Positions 7,061-35,761 of a DNA stretch of 64,000 nt are shown piece after piece (the first letter of the stretch is position 1; the number at the start of each line of letters is the position of its first letter). Origin of the DNA: Podarcis erhardii (taxonomy: Eukaryota); NCBI GenBank assembly GCA_964252035.1, contig OZ176212.1; one strand, 5' to 3'. The notes under the pieces were generated by a model. It did no database searches and was not told where the DNA came from. It saw nothing but the letters and a program-made list of their open reading frames with translations. The position numbers and the translations under genes are program-made.

Positions 7061-10000
7061 CTTCACAGTTATACAACTCTCCTAATTTTCAGCAATCTGA
7101 ACAGCATTCATCTCTTCTCCTTTAACCACACCCCTGCCTCTGAAAAGAGGAGCCCTATTGCAAAGAAATACGCACTCGCCACCTGCCAGCGCGTGTGGCA
7201 GTACAAATACGTTATTTTCCTCCCTGGTCTATTGTAGCTTTATTAGGGCTCCTTTCTATCATCATTCAGTGGAGAGGCTTGTAATCGTAATGCAAAATGG
7301 GGCAGTAGGGGTGTGTCTCTTAGGATCTCAAGGGTAGGCTTAATTGTATGTATCTCTTTATAAATATTTTGCAACAACGACATCTACTTTTATTCTTTTT
7401 TTTAAAAAAAATAACATTCTATAGTAATAAGTTGCTTGGAATGCAGTTTTTGCTTGTTTTTGGCAATTTGAGGCACACTTTCTTTTTTCTTTTTAAAAAA
7501 CACCCATATGTAACATTTTATTTTATCATTTAACAAATGATCTGCTAACTTCATTTGGAATTATAGGTGAATTTTAAGGAACCCCTTTTTTGACCCTGTT
7601 AACTCTCATTTCCCCCCATCTCTTGTCTCTGATAGGTTTGGTTTCCTGCTTGGGAGACTGGTTTTGATTGTGAGGGTGATGGCGAATGATAGGCTGTTGG
7701 TGCTGCAGTAGGTGTGGATCTTGGAGAGAGAAAAAGGGTGGGCTCTCCTTCATATCAGTGGTGCCATGTTTTGCAGTCCATGTCATATTTCTAGTATTGC
7801 TTAGATAATTATGATGTTGGGGAAAATAGCCTAAGAAAGGAAAATGTTTTCTGTGTTAGCATTTTTTTTCCATTGTGGAAATCTGAGATAGGGTAAATGA
7901 CCTGCACAGTACTCTTTTCTAAGAGCTGAGTTGCTTTGTTCCTCTATATGGGTCAGTATTATGGGATTTATATTTAGGATTCTTAATTCTTGGGTGTAAC
8001 AGTAGCACAAGACTGGTGAGTTGAAAGAGAATGAAAATGACTTTCCCCCTTCTCCATGCTTATTATGTTAATAGTTACTGTTCGGAGCAGAAATCTAACA
8101 GGGAGATAGATGATTCCTGATCAAGATGTGGTGGAGAGCTGGGGGGGGGGGGCGCACACAGCTTTATAGAGAATCATAGTCACCCAAAGATTCCAGCTTG
8201 ATTATTCTGTGCATTCATTGTTTTTCTCTCTGTCTCAGATGGTTTTCTCTGAGAGAAAAATGGATCTGAGTGTAATAGCAGCAGCTGGTCACGCCCCTGT
8301 TAGGCTAGAATACATGGATGCAAAGTGCAGTTCTCATTGGGTAAAGACTGTGGTATGCTCCTGTAGTTTTGGGTGGGGATAGAGAGGAAAAAACCCTTTT
8401 GTCTACCAGCAGAATTGGCATTAAAATAGATGCCTTGCTAGAATGAATATAGAAACACATTTTTATTATGGATTTTCCCCGTAATTGATGCTGCATCTTC
8501 CATTTTTTTTTAGTGGGGATAATTGGTCATTGTAATGTGCAAATAAACTACTATATTGGTAAGTAATGCCACTGATTTGTCAGCAAGGGCTGCATGGTTA
8601 GGCTGGTGAGATCATAGAATTCTAGGGTAAAAAAGATTCCTGGCATTGTCCATATATTTATTCAGCCTTTTAAATAGTCAATGTATGTGCTATAACTTCC
8701 CTAATCCATGGTTGCTAATTTATAGTTCTTTAGACTGTTTAAATCATTTGCATATGATGTCATTAATTCTTAAAACAATCCTGTATGGTAGGTTAGTTTA
8801 TTGTCCCTATGCTACAGGTGGGAATTGGGGATGAGGGACTGACTGGTCTCTGAGTTCATAGCTGAGGTGAGATTTGAAGAAGGAACTTCTTGGCCACTAC
8901 ACCAGCTCTCTAATACATTATTTATTAATTCTTTCTATTCTACTTCAGTCATGAATGAAAGCATAGCATTTGAACATATTTGGTGGTAATCCCTTTAGAT
9001 GCATTGCAAAGCTTTAATTTTATGGTTATAAGAAAAGAGCTCTGTCTCTAGGATCTGGTACTGGAGTTAGCCAGATTTTGGTCTTGCATCATCCTTGCAT
9101 TTCACTTAATGTTTTAGAAGAAATTTAGGGAAATTCCTGCCACTAGCTAATACAGGTATTTTAGCTGGAGAAACTCTTATTTCTTGGGTTGTTTGGAACC
9201 AAGGAAAAAGCTGATGTGGCCATCAGGTTTCCCCCTAGTTCCTTCTAACTGGTGTGTGTCTGAGCATTCCAGTAGATGTATTTGTGGTTGCAGTGCCAAG
9301 AGGCAGAGACAACCTCACCAGTGCAAAGCAGAGCAATACTATCATGTTTATTTGGAAGGAAGTTCCACTGTGTTCAGTGAGGTACTATTAGTGCTAAGTA
9401 TGTTTAGGGTTCCAACCTAATTTGCACAAGAAACTCAACTGAAGTTACCACTATACTTATGAAACATTACTTTCAAGCATCATTCCTAAATACATCAAAT
9501 TCAAAGACAACATGGGTTTTCCACACTTGCACCAAGTTGTTTGCATGATTTCAATGTATTATAAGTAGAAACCCATTTCCCTGTATCGCCCACCGCAAAA
9601 GCCAACAAGAAGAAGGTAGGTATATTGTATCTTGACTGAGAGTTCCATTCCCTGTAAAGAAGAGTTCTCATAGCTCATACTTTCGAAGTAAGGTAGAGGT
9701 ATATGCATGCACATAACGCCCTCCTCAATATGTCAACACCAAATTGTTTTAAACTAATTTTATCATTAAAATATATTTAAAATGCATACCTTGAGGTATG
9801 CCATTTTTATTTTGCTGATCTGCATATATTGTATCTTGTGCAGCCTACCAAATTTAAGGCCCAATATTTCTCCAGGAAAAAACACATTTGTTTGATAGTC
9901 TCTTTGTGCTGGGGTGTGTGTGCAGATTTCATGCAGAACAGCAGCACACGAGGAAATAAACCGCAAAAGTTGCTGCAGAAAATTATATAATTCACAAACT

Positions 10001-28746: not shown

Positions 28747-29572
28747 TGTCAGAGCTGCCCCAAGGTCCCAGCTCACAGAGGACCAACGCCAGGTCGTCGT
28801 TATGTACAAAAGTCTTTATTAAAGTTCAGTTTCCATTTCAAAGCCGCAGCGCGCAGCTCTACGTCTTAAACCCTAGACCGTCGAAGTTCCGTCTGAATCT
28901 CCTCCCCCCTGACACCAGTTTAAGATTCTAGCCCTGCTCCACCTCTTCCTCTGCTCTCTCCTCCGCTGGGTCCTCCTGCCCGCTGAGGCATTCCCCTTTC
29001 TGGACTCTTCTGACGCTGAGTCGCCTGACTCCTCCCCCTGCCTCCGGCGGGCTTTAGGACCTGGTTCCCAGTCCTCGTTCTCTACTGTCCCGCTCGCCTG
29101 TACATTTGAACTTGGCTCTCGCGCCAACCCAGTGACCTTCCTCCTGACCGTTACACTGCTTCTATCACTGCTTCCCTCTTCCGGGATGCTGGCTGGACCT
29201 GACCTCCCCTCCGTTGCCTGACTCTCCGATGGAGGCGTGGTCAGCCCTGACTCATCTTCTCTCCCTGGTGGGGGATACGCTGGACCCGATATCTGGGACT
29301 CTTCCCCCCCACTATGCTCTGGTGGGGAAGCTGGTCCTGATCTCCAACTGCTGCTCTGGGAGTCCCCGCTGGCCCCTTGCTTCTGGAGTGTCCCCCTTGG
29401 GACCCCCCTTGCCCTGGCCACCGGGGCCCCCTTCTGTGAATCTTCCGATTCGCTGGAGAGGCTCATGGAATCTCTCGGGCCATTGTCATCTTCTCCTACG
29501 CTGCCCTCCGATTCTTCCCCTTCGCTCTCCCTTTCCTCCCTTCCCTGTGCTTCTGCTCCTGAGCCCCTGACA
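28747..29572 (-). repeat. 3' LTR (826 bp)
   Basis: Minus strand begins TGTCAG (29572) and ends CTGACA (28747); preceded by the purine tract GAGGGGGGATGGA; AATAAA at 28815-28820; TATA-like CTTAAA at 28919-28924. Confidence 0.85.
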
Positions 29573-29577
29573 TCCAT
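28873..29577 (-). CDS. U3-encoded 234-aa Ser/Glu/Gly-rich ORF with basic C-terminus, function unknown
   Basis: ATG lies in the PPT, the ORF spans all of U3 and stops ~20 nt into the predicted R region, before AATAAA; internal RSGPASxPE repeats; basic clusters PKARRR and RRTQRRREQRKR. Confidence 0.5.
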   Translation of the reverse strand: MDVRGSGAEAQGREERESEGEESEGSVGEDDNGPRDSMSLSSESEDSQKGAPVARARGVPRGTLQKQGASGDSQSSSWRSGPASPPEHSGGEESQISGPAYPPPGREDESGLTTPPSESQATEGRSGPASIPEEGSSDRSSVTVRRKVTGLAREPSSNVQASGTVENEDWEPGPKARRRQGEESGDSASEESRKGNASAGRRTQRRREQRKRWSRARILNWCQGGGDSDGTSTV

Positions 29578-29614
29578 CCCCCCTCGAAGCCCCCCCTTCC
29601 CCCCTCCCCCTCTT
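29573..29614 (-). other. Polypurine tract (G-run rich, G-quadruplex-like)
   Basis: GAAGAGGGGGAGGGGGGAAGGGGGGGCTTCGAGGGGGGATGGA directly precedes the LTR TG. Confidence 0.8.
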
Positions 29615-32600
29615 CTGGTGTGGGTTCCGGGTGCTCCAGTGTTGTGGGGGTGAGTGCAGGATACAGTTCATCCCCCCTGGTGTGCAGCCAGCCGGCTGGA
29701 TTCTGCCAGTCCGTGACGGGCTCGTCGACGTCGATCTCCTCTGCTTCCATTTCTCTGCAGGTGTGCTCGAACCCAGGATCCTCCCCCAACACATCCATGT
29801 CCCCCTCTCCCCCTGTTGCCTCGGGTGACGTTGTGTGCAAGGACCCTCCCGGCAGTTCCCTGCTCCACCCCACCTCCGGTTGATCTTCCCACCAATATAG
29901 GTGCCAAAACCCAAGACCGATCCCTCTGGAGAGGTAGTCTCTGGCGCCGTTTCCTCAGCTGATGAGAACTCCTGGAACGTGCTGGCTGAGAGTGTGGGTG
30001 TGAAAAGATATTCATCGAAGTAATCTGCCGGCATGGGTCTGTGTGGGAAGAGTGCATGAAACTCGTCTTTGAGGTAGTTCTCCTCCACCGCATAGTAAGG
30101 AACCCACCTGTTGTCGCTTGCTGGGGTACCTTCCCTGGCTAGTAGATATTCAACCCCCTCTTCCCCCCATCTCGGGTCTAAAATCTCTGTGGCCTCGTTG
30201 AGTGGCGCCGCCCTCGGTGACCCCCCCTTCGTGGGCGCCTCGCTGAGTGGGTCTGGTGCGGTCCCTGGCGCCTGGAACCTGTGGGGTGCCTTGTAGGGTG
30301 TGAGCACTGATCTATGAAAGACCGGATGCATTCTGGAACCCTCTGGGAGTGTCAGCCGGAAGGCTACTGGATTGATTTGTGCCTCGACTTGATAAGGCCC
30401 TAGCTGCTTGTGTCCGAGCTTCTTCTTAGCTAACGATCTGGCCGGCACTGCCTGGGCTGCTAACCAGACCCAGTCCCCCACCTGGATGTCTTCCCCAACT
30501 CTCCTGTGTCTGTCCGCTTGCATTTTGTAGGCGTGTTTTGCTAGCTCCAACTGCCGTCGGAGTTGTTCGTGGACCTCCTGTAACTCCACTGCCAAGGCCT
30601 CTGCTCCCTGTGGCTCCCCCTCCTCTACTCTCTCTAATCCCGGGAAGGTTCTGGGATGTCGCCCATTGTTAGCGAAGAACGGTGTCACCCCCGTGGACAC
30701 GTGCTTTGTGTTGTTGTAGGCAAACTCGGCTAGCGGTAGGTAGTCCACCTAGGTCGAGGGCTATTGATTCGCGTAGCATCTCAGGTACTGCTGCATGATG
30801 GCGCTGACCCTCTCCGCTTGTCCGTTGGTCTGCGGGTGTCTTGCCGACGCTAGGTTGATCTTGACGTTCAGGATGCCCAGCAGCTTCCGCCAGAAGCTCG
30901 AGATGAACTGGCGCCCCCGGTCGGACAGGATATACCGCGGTAGGCCGTGCACCTTGAACACTTGGTCTATGAACAGCTTGGCGGTCTGTTCCGCCGTGGC
31001 CACCTTCCCGCAAGGAATGAAGTGCGCCATCTTGGTGAACATGTCTACTACCACGAGTACTGCTGTTTTGCCCCGCGAGCTGGGCAGATCTGTGACAAAG
31101 TCCAGGGCCACCCTCTCCCACGGTTCGAGCGGTGTCTGTAGCGGTTCCAGCAGTCCCGCCGGCGGTCTGTGTACTGGCTTGGCCCTTTGGCATGTGTCGC
31201 ACCTGGTGACGTAATCCGCGACTTCTCCCCTCATCTTGGGCCACCAAAAGTCTCTGGCTACTAATTCCGCCGTCTTGTCCTTGCCGAAGTGCCCGGCGCT
31301 GGGCGCGTCGTGTAACTGTTGCAGTACTTTCGCGCGGAGGTCGTCTCCTGGCATGTAGAGGGCCCCCTTGCGGATGAGCAGTCCGTCGCGTATCTGGAAC
31401 TCGTCGTCCTTCGCTGTGCCTCTTCGCACCTCCTCCATCTTGGATTGTGCGAAGGAATCCGTCTGCAGCGCGTGACGTACCGCGTCCAGGTCCACGGTGG
31501 CTGAAGCGCATGCCCACGCTTTCGGTGCGAAAATGTGTTTGGCCGCCGCCGGTGCCGCTTCCTCGAGGTACTGCGGCTTCCTGGATAGCGCATCCGCCAT
31601 GACGTTGTTGTCTCCCGGGATGTATTCTATCCTGAAGTTGAAATCCGCAAAGAACTCCGCCCAGCGGATGTGTCTCTGGTTCAGGAACCGCGCTGTGCGC
31701 CAGTACTCCAGGTTCTTATGGTCCGTGCGGCCCTGCACTGTGTGTTTGGCTCCGATGAGGAAGTGCCGCCACGCCTTGAAGGCTGCATGAATGGCCAGCA
31801 ACTCCCTGTCCCAGATGGTGTAGTTCTGCTCTGACTTGCTGAGTTTCCTGGAGTAGAAAGCACACGGCCTCCAGTCCCCTTGCGGATCTTGCTGCAACAG
31901 GACCGCCCCCACGGCTCTGTCCGAGGCGTCCGTCTCAACCCTCATTGGTTTGCTGGGGTTGACGTGTAGCAGTTGCTCTTCGGACGCGAAGAGACGTTTG
32001 AGTTTCTGAAAGGACCGCTCCGCCTGGTCTGTCCAGGTGAACTTCTTCTTCTTGGAGCTGAGGGTGTCCGTGATGGCCACCGTCTGCATAGCGAATCCCT
32101 TGATAAACTTGCGATAGAAGTTGGCGAAGCCGATGAACTTCTGGACCTCCTTCCGATTGCGCGGGCTCTTCCAGTCCAACACCGAATGGACCTTGGCGCT
32201 GTCCATGGCGAGTCCCTTGTCGGACAGCTTGTAGCCCAGGAAATCCACCTCCGTCATGTTGAACTGGCACTTCTCCAATTTGGCGTAAAGTCTGTGCTCC
32301 CATAGTCTCTGCAGGACCTCCTTGACGTCTCTGTCGTGAGCCTCCTGCGATTCCGAGAAAATCAGGATGTCGTCCAGGAAGCATACGCACTTCTTGTAGA
32401 GGAGTCCCGCTAACACGTGGTGCATGAAGGCTTGGAAACAATGGGAGCCATTTTGCAAGCCAAACGGCATAACTCTGTATTCATAGGTGCCTAAAGGCGT
32501 AAACATGGCCGTCTTCCACTCGTCGCCCTCCCGCATGCGTATAAGGTTGTACGCCCCTCGCAGATCCAACTTGGTGAAGATGCGTCCCTTCCGCACCGTC

Positions 32601-33450
32601 GCAAGCAGGTCGTCGATCTTGGGCATGGGGAATGCCATGGGCTTCGTCCTCGAATTTATGACCCGGTAATCAACTACAAGCCTCTTTTGGGGCGTGTCTT
32701 TTTTCTTCACGAAAAACACGGGACTGCCCTCCACTGCTTTGGATTCTTGGATGAATCCCCGCTTCAAGTTGTGATCTATGAACTCCCTGAGCTCTTGCAG
32801 TTCGTCTTCAGACATGGAATACAGTTTTCCAGTCAGCAGCGTCGCCCCCGGCAGGAGGTCAATCTTGCAGTCGTAGGGCCTGTGGGGAGGCAGCTTGTCC
32901 GCTTCCTTCTCGCAGAAGACCTCCAAAAATGCCTTGTACTTGTCGGGCACCGCTTGCAGCATGCCCAAGTGTAGCTGCGGTTCATCCTCTCGCCCCTCAT
33001 CTTCCTGGCTAGTCAGGATGCAGTGTTCTGCGCAGTAGGAGGAGGAGGAGGTCAATTGACGCTGGTACCATGCTAGTGCCGGGCTGTGCCTGTCCAGCCA
33101 ACTCATGCCCAATACTATGGGCATGTCCGACAGGTGGGTGACATTGAAGCTGATGACTTCGCGGTGATTTCCAATTTGCATCACCATTGGCGGTGTTTGC
33201 TGTACCACCTGTCCTCCCAGTAGCTCTCTGCCATCAACCGTGACGACGTTCAGGGGCATCGTGGCAGGTAGGAGTGCTATGTGATGTTGCTTGATAAAGT
33301 CCACTCCTACAAAGTCTGCATTACTGCCACAGTCAATGGTAATAGGGACTTCCATGGTGAGTCCATTGGGTAGCTGGAGCGATGCGGTGAGTTGCACCAC
33401 TGGTTTGGGCGGGAGGGGGTCTGTGGGCTGTAAGATCCCTGGGGACTGCT

Positions 33451-34516
33451 TCACTGACTCGTCTGGCTGGGCCCCAGTGCCTCTGTCTCCAGCCAGACTC
33501 CGTCGTTTCCCTGCTGTTGTTCTGCTTCCTTTACTGTTGCTGAGGCTGCAGTGTGCTTGTGGAGCCTCTGGGGACACTCTTTCGCCATGTGCTGAGCACT
33601 GTCGCAGATGTAACACTTCCTGTTCCCTCTAGGAGCCTTCGTCTTGACTGCTCCTGGTGTTTGGGCTCTGGTTGCTGTCTGAGCCCTGGCACCACCTATC
33701 TCCATCGGCTCTTCTCCCCCTCCCAGTGGAGGCGTGGATTGGGCGTGCGCTGTCTCTCTGGGAAAGAAAGGAGGTGATCTAGCTGGCGTGCGTCCCCAAC
33801 GTCCTTCATCCTTGCTCCAAGGACGTTCTTCCAGACGCACCCCTATCGCCAGCGCTCTCTGGACGACTTCCTGAGTGCTCTGGGGTCTCTCCCCCCTCGC
33901 AATTTCATCTTTCACAGCCCCATTCAGCCCCTCCCAGAACAGGTCCCGGGCGGCAGCTGAGTTCTTTTCCCATCCCAGCGCATTAACCAACGCAAAAAAG
34001 TGGGAGTGATATTGTCGCACAGTGGCTTTGCCCTGTTTCAGTCCATGAATCTCCCTCATGGCAACATCCACATCTACTGCAGATTGAAAACAAGCATCCA
34101 TAGCCTTAATAAAGGCATCTGAATTTTGGAGGGCAGGATCATTGTCGCGCCAAAGATTGCGCAGCCACGCTTTAGCTTCCCCATGCAGAGGAGTTAGTAT
34201 GAAGCCTACTTTTTCCTGCTCATCTCTAAAGTCCTTCTGCAGCAACTTGAGCGCGAAAACTACGTCTGCTCTGAAGTTAGGATACTGCTGCAGGCTCCCA
34301 TCGAAATGAGACACGAGGCTGCCCCTCCCTCTTTCCGAGACCAATCCCCTCCGGTTTGGCACCTGGCAGCCCCTGCTTGCTCAACATTTCCAACCTGGTT
34401 TGCAGATCCTGGCAGGCAGCGGCTGCTTCGTCCTCTCTCTTTCTGGATGCTGCTATTTCCATGGTAAGCCTTGTGACTGCGTCTTGCAGGGCTGCCATTC
34501 TTTCGTCTGTACTCAT
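33451..34516 (-). pseudogene. gag (coiled coil, retrotransposon-gag capsid, CCHC knuckle) with a 1-nt frameshift near 34365
   Basis: AGG ATG at 34516 (MSTDERMAALQDAV...); continues in the 33451..34362 frame (FDGS...LHGEAKAW...LFWEGLNGAVKDEI, CYICDSAQHMAKEC). Confidence 0.85.
33505..33511 (-). promoter_or_regulatory. -1 ribosomal frameshift slippery site G GGA AAC
   Basis: In gag phase (CAG GGA AAC), pol is in the -1 frame; 8-nt spacer, then an 8-bp stem CTGGCTGG/CCAGCCAG. Confidence 0.8.
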
Positions 34517-34596
34517 CCTTCCCAATCTTCGTGAGCTCCCAAAGCACCAAGCTTCGCCCCTCGCTGCGTCAACTCACGCTGCGAAGGTTTTTATGG

Positions 34597-34607
34597 AGAC
34601 GGAACTT
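34597..34607 (-). promoter_or_regulatory. Primer-binding site, self-priming (Tf1-type)
   Basis: AAGTTCCGTCT, 2 nt after the 5' LTR, is the exact complement of AGACGGAACTT at 34757-34747 in the LTR, ~29 nt downstream of a TATA-like box. Confidence 0.85.
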
Positions 34608-34609
34608 AC

Positions 34610-35438
34610 TGTCAGAGCTGCCCCAAGGTCCCAGCTCACAGAGGACCAACGCCAGGTCGTCGTTATGTACAAAAGTCTTTATTAAAGTTCAGTTTCCATT
34701 TCAAAGCCGCAGCGCGCAGCTCTACGTCTTAAACCCTAGACCGTCGAAGTTCCGTCTGAATCTCCTCCCCCCTGACACCAGTTTAAGATTCTAGCCCTGC
34801 TCCACCTCTTCCTCTGCTCTCTCCTCCGCTGGGTCCTCCTGCCCGCTGAGGCATTCCCCTTTCTGGACTCTTCTGACGCTGAGTCGCCTGACTCCTCCCC
34901 CTGCCTCCGGCGGGCTTTAGGACCTGGTTCCCAGTCCTCGTTCTCTACTGTCCCGCTCGCCTGTACATTTGAACTTGGCTCTCGCGCCAACCCAGTGACC
35001 TTCCTCCTGACCGTTACACTGCTTCTATCACTGCTTCCCTCTTCCGGGATGCTGGCTGGACCTGACCTCCCCTCCGTTGCCTGACTCTCCGATGGAGGCG
35101 TGGTCAGCCCTGACTCATCTTCTCTCCCTGGTGGGGGATACGCTGGACCCGATATCTGGGACTCTTCCCCCCCCCACTATGCTCTGGTGGGGAAGCTGGT
35201 CCTGATCTCCAACTGCTGCTCTGGGAGTCCCCTGCTGGCCCCTTGCTTCTGGAGTGTCCCCCTTGGGACCCCCCTTGCCCTGGCCACCGGGGCCCCCTTC
35301 TGTGAATCTTCCAATTCGCTGGAGAGGCTCATGGAATCTCTCGGGCCATTGTCATCTTCTCCTACGCTGCCCTCCGATTCTTCCCCTTCGCTCTCCCTTT
35401 CCTCCCTTCCCTGTGCTTCTGCTCCTGAGCCCCTGACA
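34610..35438 (-). repeat. 5' LTR (829 bp)
   Basis: Matches the 3' LTR apart from a C-run 2 nt longer, one extra base and one substitution that I could see; AATAAA at 34678-34683; TATA-like box at 34782-34787. Confidence 0.85.
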
Positions 35439-35761
35439 TCCATCCCCCCTCGAAGCCCCCCCTTCCCCCCTCCCCCTCTTCTGGTGTGGGTTCCGGGTGC
35501 TCCAGTGTTGTGGGGGTGAGTGCAGGATACAGTTCATCCCCCCTGGTGTGCAGCCAGCCGGCTGGATTCTGCCAGTCCGTGACGGGCTCGTCGACGTCGA
35601 TCTCCTCTGCTTCCATTTCTCTGCAGGTGTGCTCGAACCCAGGATCCTCCCCCAACACATCCATGTCCCCCTCTCCCCCTGTTGCCTCGGGTGACGTTGT
35701 GTGCAAGGACCCTCCCGGCAGTTCCCTGCTCCACCCCACCTCCGGTTGATCTTCCCACCAA
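35439..35761 (-). repeat. Duplicate of the PPT and 3' internal segment (323 bp) upstream of the 5' LTR
   Basis: Matches 29573-29895; similarity stops abruptly at ...cttcccaccaa. Confidence 0.85.

What the first reader, a model, noticed from the sequence alone, without database searches (positions are those of the whole stretch)
34540..34790. tRNA-independent self-priming: the PBS is the exact 11-nt complement of the predicted transcript 5' end
Seen: the PBS AAGTTCCGTCT (34607-34597) pairs perfectly, and for exactly 11 nt, with AGACGGAACTT (34757-34747), which starts ~29 nt after a CTTAAA TATA-like box. Extra pairings are possible: two GCTGCG in R with two CGCAGC in the leader, and U5 GTGAGCT with leader AGCTCAC. 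Knowledge: fission-yeast Tf1 primes with the first 11 nt of its own RNA, and self-priming has been proposed for vertebrate sushi elements. Inference: this predicts the TSS to the base and gives a clear squamate example with its supporting RNA structure.
Basis: partly seen in the sequence, partly recalled or inferred. Interest (0 to 1): 0.7.

Follow-up and report, generated by a model that had tools for sequence, protein, structure and literature searches.

The report
Self-priming retrotransposon in a lizard
A jumping gene in a lacertid lizard genome carries, just after its left repeat, an 11-letter site that pairs exactly with the predicted first 11 letters of its own RNA. Related copies change both sites together, so it very probably starts copying itself with its own RNA end instead of a tRNA, a mechanism already known from yeast Tf1 and proposed for other vertebrates.

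Summary
AAGTTCCGTCT (34607-34597, minus strand) lies 2 nt after the 5' LTR and is the exact complement of AGACGGAACTT (34757-34747) inside that LTR. None of 1000 shuffled LTRs gave a match this long.

The host element is a Ty3/gypsy retrotransposon with a PEG10/RTL-type gag. Its closest relatives are in Podarcis.

Six related 5' LTR-PBS junctions carry four primer/PBS haplotypes. Three of the 11 pairs show compensatory double changes, and every pair stays Watson-Crick. Six further families (Podarcis, two Anolis, Xenopus, two Ranitomeya) have unrelated PBS sequences, each matched by 9-11 nt in its own LTR. In all of them an A/T box starts 29-32 nt upstream of the complement, which places the complement at the transcription start.

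No tRNA-type TGG site is present. No RNA data could be obtained, so the start site remains a prediction.

An R:U5 helix and a U5 hairpin covary instead. The U5 GTGAGCT and leader AGCTCAC are invariant.

The mechanism is known from Tf1 and has been proposed for vertebrate Tf1/sushi elements, so this is a well-supported new member. This copy has a broken gag and pol. First-stage notes report similar self-priming elements elsewhere in this genome.

The parts
34610..35438 (-). 5' LTR (829 nt, TGTCAG...CTGACA). U3 is 35438-34758 and R-U5 is 34757-34610.
   Evidence: The LTR start is set by homology to the LTR starts of relatives and by the terminal inverted repeat. The LTR end is confirmed by loose ends of contigs at 34610 and by the depth step.
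28747..29572 (-). 3' LTR (826 nt). It holds a second copy of the primer 11-mer at 28894-28884.
34782..34787 (-). TATA-like box CTTAAA, 30 nt upstream of the predicted start.
   Evidence: An A/T 5-mer at -29 to -32 is present in all nine elements tested; the background frequency is 1-15% per LTR.
34747..34757 (-). Predicted first 11 nt of the transcript (AGACGGAACTT), the self-primer. The predicted TSS is 34757.
   Evidence: It is the exact complement of the PBS, with three covarying pairs. The TSS itself is inferred, not shown.
34716..34725 (-). R nt 33-42 (GTAGAGCTGC), the 5' strand of the R:U5 helix.
   Evidence: RNAalifold; pair counts, (helix 3: 10 pairs, 2 with compensatory changes, 100% paired).
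34678..34683 (-). Poly(A) signal AATAAA at +75, invariant in all six related copies. It puts the R/U5 border at about +95 to +100.
   Evidence: The border itself is inferred.
34627..34647 (-). U5 hairpin (stem GGTCCT/GGGACC). Its loop carries the invariant GTGAGCT (34639-34633).
   Evidence: (helix 5: 6 pairs, 2 compensatory)
34611..34621 (-). U5 nt 137-147 (GCAGCTCTGAC), the 3' strand of the R:U5 helix, directly before the LTR end.
34608..34609 (-). 2-nt spacer GT between the LTR end (CA) and the PBS.
   Evidence: The same 2-nt spacer (GT or GA) occurs in all vertebrate relatives.
34597..34607 (-). Primer binding site AAGTTCCGTCT.
34531..34537 (-). Leader AGCTCAC, 14 nt before the gag ATG. 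It is invariant in a leader that otherwise varies and has indels, and it is complementary to the U5 loop GTGAGCT.
   Evidence: (helix 6: 7 pairs that never vary)
34514..34516 (-). gag start codon.
   Evidence: It aligns with the start of the 358-359-aa gag ORFs of relatives.
33451..34362 (-). Main gag ORF (Ty3/PEG10-type capsid, zinc knuckle). It is out of frame with the start codon; the frame changes between 34380 and 34277.
30761..33616 (-). pol ORF (protease, RT, RNase H, integrase core), ending at an in-frame stop at 30763-30761.
29573..30748 (-). Integrase C-terminal part (Tf2-type SH3) and the polypurine tract (29616-29573).
35439..35761 (-). Duplicate of the pol tail plus polypurine tract lying upstream of the 5' LTR, a remnant of an upstream or tandem copy.
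   Evidence: 323 of 323 identical to 29573-29895

Best explanation
This is a Ty3/gypsy LTR retrotransposon of a lacertid lizard that starts reverse transcription by Tf1-type self-priming. Transcription is predicted to start at 34757, 30 nt after a TATA-like box in the 5' LTR. The first 11 nt of the RNA fold back onto the 11-nt primer binding site, which lies 2 nt after the LTR. An R:U5 helix and a U5 hairpin hold the two ends together. By analogy with Tf1, the element's RNase H then cuts after nt 11, and the 3' OH of this 11-mer primes minus-strand DNA through U5 and R. Because plus-strand synthesis copies the primer, the primer sequence is written back into the PBS at each cycle, which keeps the two 11-mers perfectly matched as they drift. 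Shown here: the complementarity, its position, its covariation, the covarying flanking helices, and the TATA spacing. Inferred: the exact transcription start, the RNase H cut, whether priming is in cis or in trans, and the copy-back. This particular copy has intact cis signals but a broken gag and pol, so it could only move with proteins from other copies.
For: The 11-bp complement is exact and starts 2 nt after the LTR, and 0 of 1000 shuffles reach it. The element is Ty3/gypsy: gag with Ty3_capsid, PEG10/RTL-type domain and zinc knuckle, then PR-RT-RH-IN with a Tf2-type SH3. The best solved relatives are Ty3 Gag-Pol and PEG10. The nearest proteins are Podarcis, up to 94% identical, and more distant relatives carry chromodomains. 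Six related junctions carry four haplotypes: AGACGGAACTT/AAGTTCCGTCT, AGAGGGGACTT/AAGTCCCCTCT, AGACGGAGCTT/AAGCTCCGTCT and AGATGGAGCTT/AAGCTCCATCT. RNAalifold finds this helix unprompted, with 3 compensatory pairs. Over the whole structure, 98.9% of cells are paired against 33-44% when the partners are slid, and 0 of 500 shuffles reach the covariation score. Independent families show the same layout: L006 TTGCTCCCGC, L005 TTGACTCCGC, L010 TTGCCCAACGC, L001 ATGTCCGAGC, L003 ACAATCAGGC and L002-outer AAGCAAAGG. Each is matched exactly in its own LTR, with 0-13 of 1000 shuffles reaching the match. The fungal relative L004 pairs over 12 nt with one G:U. In the cross-family control, own-LTR matches are 9-11 nt while matches to unrelated LTRs never exceed 8 nt. 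An A/T box starts at -29 to -32 in every case. The literature reports Tf1 self-priming with the first 11 nt and an RNase H cut between nt 11 and 12 (PMC7175516), and the mechanism has been implicated from fungi to vertebrates (PMC4600332, PMC6317226).
Against: There is no RNA evidence for the start site. The run search returned only assembled contigs, none on record as RNA, and these cannot show RNA ends. The whole-leader fold of this copy alone is not more stable than shuffles (z = -0.9). The six related junctions represent only about four independent lineages. One amphibian relative (L002 inner element) has no such complement, so the trait is not universal among relatives. A chromodomain, typical of Tf1 and sushi, is not detected in this copy. 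The PBS was not compared with a full host tRNA set, because no tRNA genes occur in the window or the fetched loci.
Confidence: 0.85

Rival explanations
1. The 5'-end/PBS duplex is real, but it serves another purpose, such as genome circularisation, packaging, dimerisation or translation control. Reverse transcription would then be primed by something else.
For: Covariation proves pairing, not priming. Long-range 5' leader pairings with such roles exist in retroviruses (my knowledge). The invariant U5 loop and leader 7-mers suggest further regulatory pairing.
Against: The paired site sits exactly where a PBS must be, 2 nt after the LTR's terminal CA, in every family. No alternative PBS is present: there is no TGG within 25 nt of the LTR. 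The only TGGTGC in the leader is lost in L007A and L008C. The same arrangement is the experimentally proven primer in Tf1 (PMC7175516).
Confidence: 0.07
2. Self-priming occurs, but not as drawn. Either transcription starts upstream and the primer is released by processing on both sides, or the 11-mer of a second, co-packaged RNA primes in trans.
For: The start site is not mapped. CTTAAA is a weak TATA box. Trans priming has been reported for Tf1 (my knowledge, not checked here).
Against: The A/T box is spaced 29-32 nt from the first paired base in nine elements of seven families, against a 1-15% background. The pairing stops exactly at that base in this family.
Confidence: 0.06
3. The element is primed by a host tRNA or tRNA fragment, and the match within the LTR is coincidental.
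For: The host tRNA set could not be searched. Some elements use internal tRNA parts as primers (PMC6317226).
Against: The PBS has no TGG. Chance is excluded. Three PBS variants in one genome each covary with their own LTR, which a fixed tRNA cannot produce.
Confidence: 0.02

Closest known systems
Tf1 (and Tf2, Tj1) of fission yeasts, the founding self-primed Ty3/gypsy retrotransposons
   Same: The PBS is complementary to the first 11 nt of the element's own RNA, and the duplex is also 11 bp. A structured R-U5 brings the two ends together, with a U5 stem-loop next to the primer duplex. The integrase has a Tf2-type SH3 domain (PMC7175516, PMC4600332).
   Different: The host is a vertebrate and there is no sequence similarity in the LTR or PBS. 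gag and pol lie in two frames with a -1 overlap. The chromodomain is not detectable in this copy. The RNase H cut and the priming have not been shown for this element.
Vertebrate Tf1/sushi-group elements (sushi-ichi of pufferfish and relatives; Butler et al. 2001, cited in PMC4600332 and PMC6317226)
   Same: These are vertebrate Ty3/gypsy elements with a predicted self-primer. The gag is of the type that gave rise to mammalian PEG10/RTL genes (PF16297 hit; PEG10 is the best solved match).
   Different: That paper could not be read here. I found no report for squamates in the held library. Here the prediction is backed by within-family compensatory changes and by seven families compared side by side.
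Plant and fungal Tcn1-clade chromoviruses and TAR copia elements with predicted self-priming (PMC6317226)
   Same: The PBS matches the element's own LTR instead of a tRNA. The fungal relative L004 (Batrachochytrium) shows a 12-bp pairing with one G:U.
   Different: These are distant hosts and clades, and their priming is predicted only from complementarity.
Retroviral U5-IR stem-loop and HIV-1 U5:AUG long-range pairing
   Same: There is a U5 hairpin next to the PBS. A U5 segment is complementary to a site just upstream of the gag AUG.
   Different: This is a resemblance from my own knowledge only. The U5/leader 7-mers never vary, so their pairing is unproven.

Membership tests
Tf1-type self-primed LTR retrotransposons | A PBS directly after the 5' LTR that is complementary to a sequence in the element's own LTR and not to a tRNA 3' end | tested here: met
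   Exact 11-bp complement 2 nt after the LTR, with no TGG; 0 of 1000 shuffles reach it; cross-family control.
Tf1-type self-primed LTR retrotransposons | The complementary sequence is the very 5' end of the transcript | tested here: inconclusive
   A TATA-like box lies at -29 to -32 in nine elements. No RNA reads were available.
Tf1-type self-primed LTR retrotransposons | The primer and the PBS are kept complementary in evolution | tested here: met
   3 of 11 pairs show compensatory double changes and all cells are Watson-Crick. Seven families have different sequences.
Tf1-type self-primed LTR retrotransposons | An extended RNA structure around the primer duplex, including a U5 stem-loop | tested here: met
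   The R:U5 helix and the U5 hairpin each have 2 compensatory pairs. Equivalence to the Tf1 structure was not tested, because the Tf1 papers are not held.
Tf1-type self-primed LTR retrotransposons | RNase H cleavage after nt 11 releases the primer, and an 11-nt RNA is found on minus-strand strong-stop DNA | not testable with these tools
   This needs biochemistry.
Tf1/sushi group of chromoviruses (Ty3/gypsy) | Ty3/gypsy gene order: gag, PR, RT, RNase H, IN | tested here: met
   Pfam domains in order; Ty3 Gag-Pol is the best solved match, E = 1.9e-114.
Tf1/sushi group of chromoviruses (Ty3/gypsy) | A chromodomain at the integrase C-terminus | tested here: not met
   There is no Chromo hit in this copy, even at E <= 10. 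The 94% relative P0001 gives 14 bits, below threshold. Relatives at 47-60% identity have a clear one. I read this lineage as chromovirus-derived with a decayed or lost chromodomain.
Tf1/sushi group of chromoviruses (Ty3/gypsy) | The pol tree places it with Tf1 and sushi-ichi | not tested
   No reference Tf1 or sushi-ichi sequence was retrievable with the tools. The only indirect evidence is the chromodomain-bearing vertebrate and fungal neighbours and the PEG10/RTL-type gag.

The most novel reading that the evidence does not exclude
Beyond self-priming, the invariant U5 hairpin loop GUGAGCU may pair with the invariant AGCUCAC 14 nt before the gag AUG. This would be a long-range U5:leader contact like the HIV-1 U5:AUG interaction, switching the RNA between translation and priming or packaging. 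Analogous U5/near-AUG complements of 7-9 nt occur at similar places in the Anolis, Xenopus and Ranitomeya families. If real, it would be an ancient shared feature of chromovirus leaders that I have not seen described (my knowledge; no search was made for it).
Probability: 0.25. Interest if true: 0.5.

Novelty: new member of a known kind. Interest (0 to 1): 0.3.

Why it matters
The result gives a clean, covariation-backed case of tRNA-independent priming in a squamate. It also shows the same layout in seven lizard and frog families, so self-priming looks like the rule among these vertebrate relatives of Tf1/sushi elements. In practice, the rule 'PBS = complement of the base about 30 nt after the TATA box' lets annotators place the U3/R border and the transcription start of such LTRs without RNA data. 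It also explains why tRNA-based PBS finders miss these very abundant elements. It does not change what is known about the mechanism.

Tried and rejected
**RNA evidence for the start site.**
- The run search returned only Logan contigs, none on record as RNA.
- Laying four runs showed LTR abundance and the LTR end at 34610, but no molecule starts.

**tRNA priming.**
- No tRNA genes occur in the window or in nine fetched loci, so a host tRNA comparison was impossible.
- I rejected tRNA priming on the lack of TGG and on the covariation.

I rejected them as a conserved structure:
- the leader part is deleted in L007A and L008C;
- pairing is broken in L007B and L008D;
- it is only 4-5 of 6 pairs in L009E.

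**My first LTR boundaries.** The 1152-nt repeat was wrong by 323 nt. This also explains why I found no target-site duplication and no polypurine tract at that boundary.

**Other dead ends.**
- Rfam gave nothing relevant, and the bacterial promoter/terminator scan is not applicable.
- Podarcis UniRef proteins could not be traced to DNA. One newt locus had no DNA.
- The Tf1 primary papers and review are not held.
- The single-sequence fold is not more stable than shuffles, so stability alone is no argument.
- The large protein search and structure prediction were not needed and were not run.

Full report
**What is there.** On the minus strand the window holds a Ty3/gypsy LTR retrotransposon. BLAST of the region against itself gave two 1152-nt repeats, 99.65% identical: 28747-29895 and 34610-35761. 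Comparison with related elements showed that only part of each repeat is LTR. In all relatives the LTR starts at the position homologous to 29572 (TGTCAG), directly after a long purine tract. The true LTRs are therefore 34610-35438 and 28747-29572, with perfect TGTCAG...CTGACA termini. The 323 nt at 35439-35761 are an identical second copy (323/323) of the pol tail plus polypurine tract. They are the remnant of an upstream or tandem copy.

Between the LTRs lie three coding parts:
- gag, with a Ty3/PEG10-type capsid, PF16297 and a zinc knuckle;
- pol, with protease, RT, RNase H and integrase;
- a Tf2-type SH3 integrase tail.

The best solved relatives are Ty3 Gag-Pol (E = 1.9e-114) and, weakly, PEG10. 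The nearest proteins are from Podarcis muralis and P. lilfordi, at up to 94% identity. More distant relatives (47-60%) in Podarcis, Anolis, frogs and fungi carry chromodomains. In this copy no chromodomain is detectable; a 94% relative shows only a sub-threshold trace.

This copy is damaged. The gag start codon (34516) opens a 79-codon frame, and the main gag ORF is in another frame, so the frame changes between 34380 and 34277. pol has an in-frame stop at 30763-30761.

**The observation.** The 5' LTR ends ...CTGACA at 34610. GT follows, then AAGTTCCGTCT (34607-34597). Its exact complement AGACGGAACTT lies at 34757-34747. The bases flanking the duplex cannot pair, so it is exactly 11 bp. CTTAAA begins 30 nt upstream of 34757 and AATAAA lies at +75. 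None of 1000 dinucleotide shuffles of the LTR gave an 11-nt complement to the first bases after the LTR.

**Covariation within the superfamily.** Protein relatives were traced to DNA with the look-up of encoding contigs. Three Podarcis lilfordi loci (L007, L008, L009) hold five further 5' LTR-PBS junctions of the same superfamily, whose R-U5-leader regions are 75-84% identical to the window. Aligned with the window, they show four primer/PBS haplotypes:

| Copies | First 11 nt of R | PBS |
|---|---|---|
| Window | AGACGGAACTT | AAGTTCCGTCT |
| L007A, L008C | AGAGGGGACTT | AAGTCCCCTCT |
| L007B, L008D | AGACGGAGCTT | AAGCTCCGTCT |
| L009E | AGATGGAGCTT | AAGCTCCATCT |

Every change on one side is matched on the other. 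Pair 4 is C:G, G:C or U:A. Pairs 7 and 8 are A:U or G:C.

RNAalifold, given only the alignment, predicted this helix with three compensatory pairs. Counted on the named structure (44 pairs in 6 helices), 98.9% of cells pair, against 33-44% when the 3' partners are slid by 1-3 columns. No shuffle of 500 reached the observed covariation score. Three PBS variants in one genome, each matched in cis, cannot be explained by a host tRNA.

**Other families.** The same search (longest exact complement of the 30 nt after the 5' LTR, sought inside that LTR) gave the following.

| Locus | Host | PBS | Match in own LTR | Shuffles reaching it (of 1000) |
|---|---|---|---|---|
| L006 | P. lilfordi | TTGCTCCCGC | 10 nt | 2 |
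| L005 | Anolis carolinensis | TTGACTCCGC | 10 nt | 2 |
| L010 | Anolis carolinensis | TTGCCCAACGC | 11 nt | not shuffled |
| L001 | Xenopus tropicalis | ATGTCCGAGC | 10 nt (11 with the LTR end at 8846) | 0 |
| L003 | Ranitomeya variabilis | ACAATCAGGC | 10 nt | 0 |
| L002, outer element | Ranitomeya imitator | AAGCAAAGG | 9 nt | 13 |

In each case the PBS starts 2 nt after the LTR's terminal CA or TA.
- The fungal relative L004 (Batrachochytrium) pairs over 12 nt with one G:U.
- One element, the inner element of L002, has no such complement.
- As a control, each PBS zone was searched against every other element's LTR. Own-LTR matches are 9-11 nt, while matches to unrelated LTRs never exceed 8 nt.

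**Is the complement the RNA 5' end?** No RNA evidence could be obtained. The run search listed only assembled contigs, none on record as RNA, and contigs cannot show ends. That call did confirm the LTR end at 34610 (loose ends) and showed the LTR about ten times deeper than the internal part, which points to many solo LTRs.

The indirect evidence is strong. In all nine elements with a self-complement, a run of at least five A/T bases starts 29-32 nt upstream of the first paired base: TTAAA, ATTAA, ATAAAA, AATATA, ATAAAAT, TATTTA, TATAAAA, TATTT. The background chance is 1-15% per LTR. In the window family the start context TCAGA is invariant and resembles an initiator, which is my knowledge and not a test. 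I therefore treat 34757 as a good prediction, not a mapped site.

**Supporting RNA structure.** The leader partner is deleted in L007A and L008C, and pairing is broken in L007B, L008D and L009E.

The features that do covary or stay conserved are these:
- An R:U5 helix, nt 33-42 with nt 137-147 (34725-34716 with 34621-34611), has two compensatory pairs.
- A U5 hairpin, 34647-34627, also has two compensatory pairs.
- The hairpin loop carries GTGAGCT, which is invariant.
- AGCTCAC, 14 nt before the gag AUG, is likewise invariant, although the leader around it is full of substitutions and indels.

The conservation of the two 7-mers suggests function, but without variation their pairing is unproven. 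Other families show 7-9-nt complements between U5 and the gag AUG region at similar places. Each of these is individually near chance level.

**Mechanism.** By analogy with Tf1, the first 11 nt pair with the PBS and RNase H cuts between nt 11 and 12 (PMC7175516). The 5' 11-mer would then be released as the minus-strand primer. It follows from the standard reverse-transcription scheme that the primer is copied during plus-strand synthesis. A change in the 11-mer would thus be written into the PBS, which explains the perfect matches. This step is inference.

**Comparison and novelty.** Self-priming was demonstrated for Tf1 and has been implicated 'from fungi to vertebrates' (PMC4600332). Surveys treat it as typical of the Tf1/sushi group (PMC6317226), and both papers cite Butler et al. 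2001 for vertebrates. I found no squamate report in the held library, and the primary Tf1 papers could not be read. The finding is a well-supported new member of a known kind. First-stage notes of this scan report similar self-priming elements elsewhere in this genome; I did not check them.

**Limits.**
- There are only about four independent lineages within the superfamily.
- No reference-based pol tree was built.
- No host tRNA set was available.
The copies were only compared.

Noticed in passing
window 35439-35761 and 29573-29895: The 323 nt upstream of the 5' LTR are an exact second copy of the pol tail plus polypurine tract. The element is therefore preceded by the truncated 3' end of another copy, in a tandem LTR-internal-LTR arrangement cut at 35761. 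This is why no target-site duplication is seen at the left side.
   Followed up: partly
window 34277-34380 and 30761-30763: This copy's gag changes frame about 45-80 codons after its start codon, and pol has an in-frame stop between the integrase core and the SH3 tail, even though the LTRs are 99.65% identical. Some related copies have an uninterrupted 358-359-codon gag. All copies examined are interrupted somewhere in pol.
   Followed up: partly
window 33451-35761: In Logan contigs of four runs (three organism labels) the LTR is about ten times deeper than the internal part, and thousands of contig pieces at 85-99% identity were laid. This is a very abundant family with many solo LTRs in several related species.
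   Followed up: no
window 28873-29577 (minus strand): A 234-codon ORF starts in the polypurine tract and runs through U3, the TATA-like box and the self-primer of the 3' LTR. I did not test whether it is coding.
   Followed up: no
L002:7688-8520: An element nested inside the Ranitomeya imitator self-priming element has no self-complement after its LTR. Its downstream sequence, GTACTGGAGGCCCAAAG, contains a TGG, so it may use a tRNA. Priming mode may therefore differ between related elements.
   Followed up: no
L005:8224-19691 and L003:24900-46200: The Anolis locus is a tandem LTR-internal-LTR-internal-LTR array. The Ranitomeya variabilis locus holds two element copies embedded in long arrays of a repeat of about 122 bp.
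   Followed up: no
L005, L001, L002, L003 leaders: U5 segments 29-49 nt before the LTR end are complementary (7-9 nt) to sites at or just upstream of the gag AUG in several unrelated families. This parallels the invariant GTGAGCT/AGCTCAC pair of the window family.
   Followed up: partly
window 29573-30748; P0001:1058-1104: The chromodomain typical of this group is undetectable in the window copy and sub-threshold (14 bits) in its 94% relative, but clear in the 57% relative P0006. It appears to be decaying in this lineage.
   Followed up: partly
window 33454-33628: gag and pol overlap by about 175 nt, with pol in the -1 frame, as in related copies. This is consistent with the separate first-reader note of a PEG10-type -1 frameshift site (s1-238348).
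   Followed up: no
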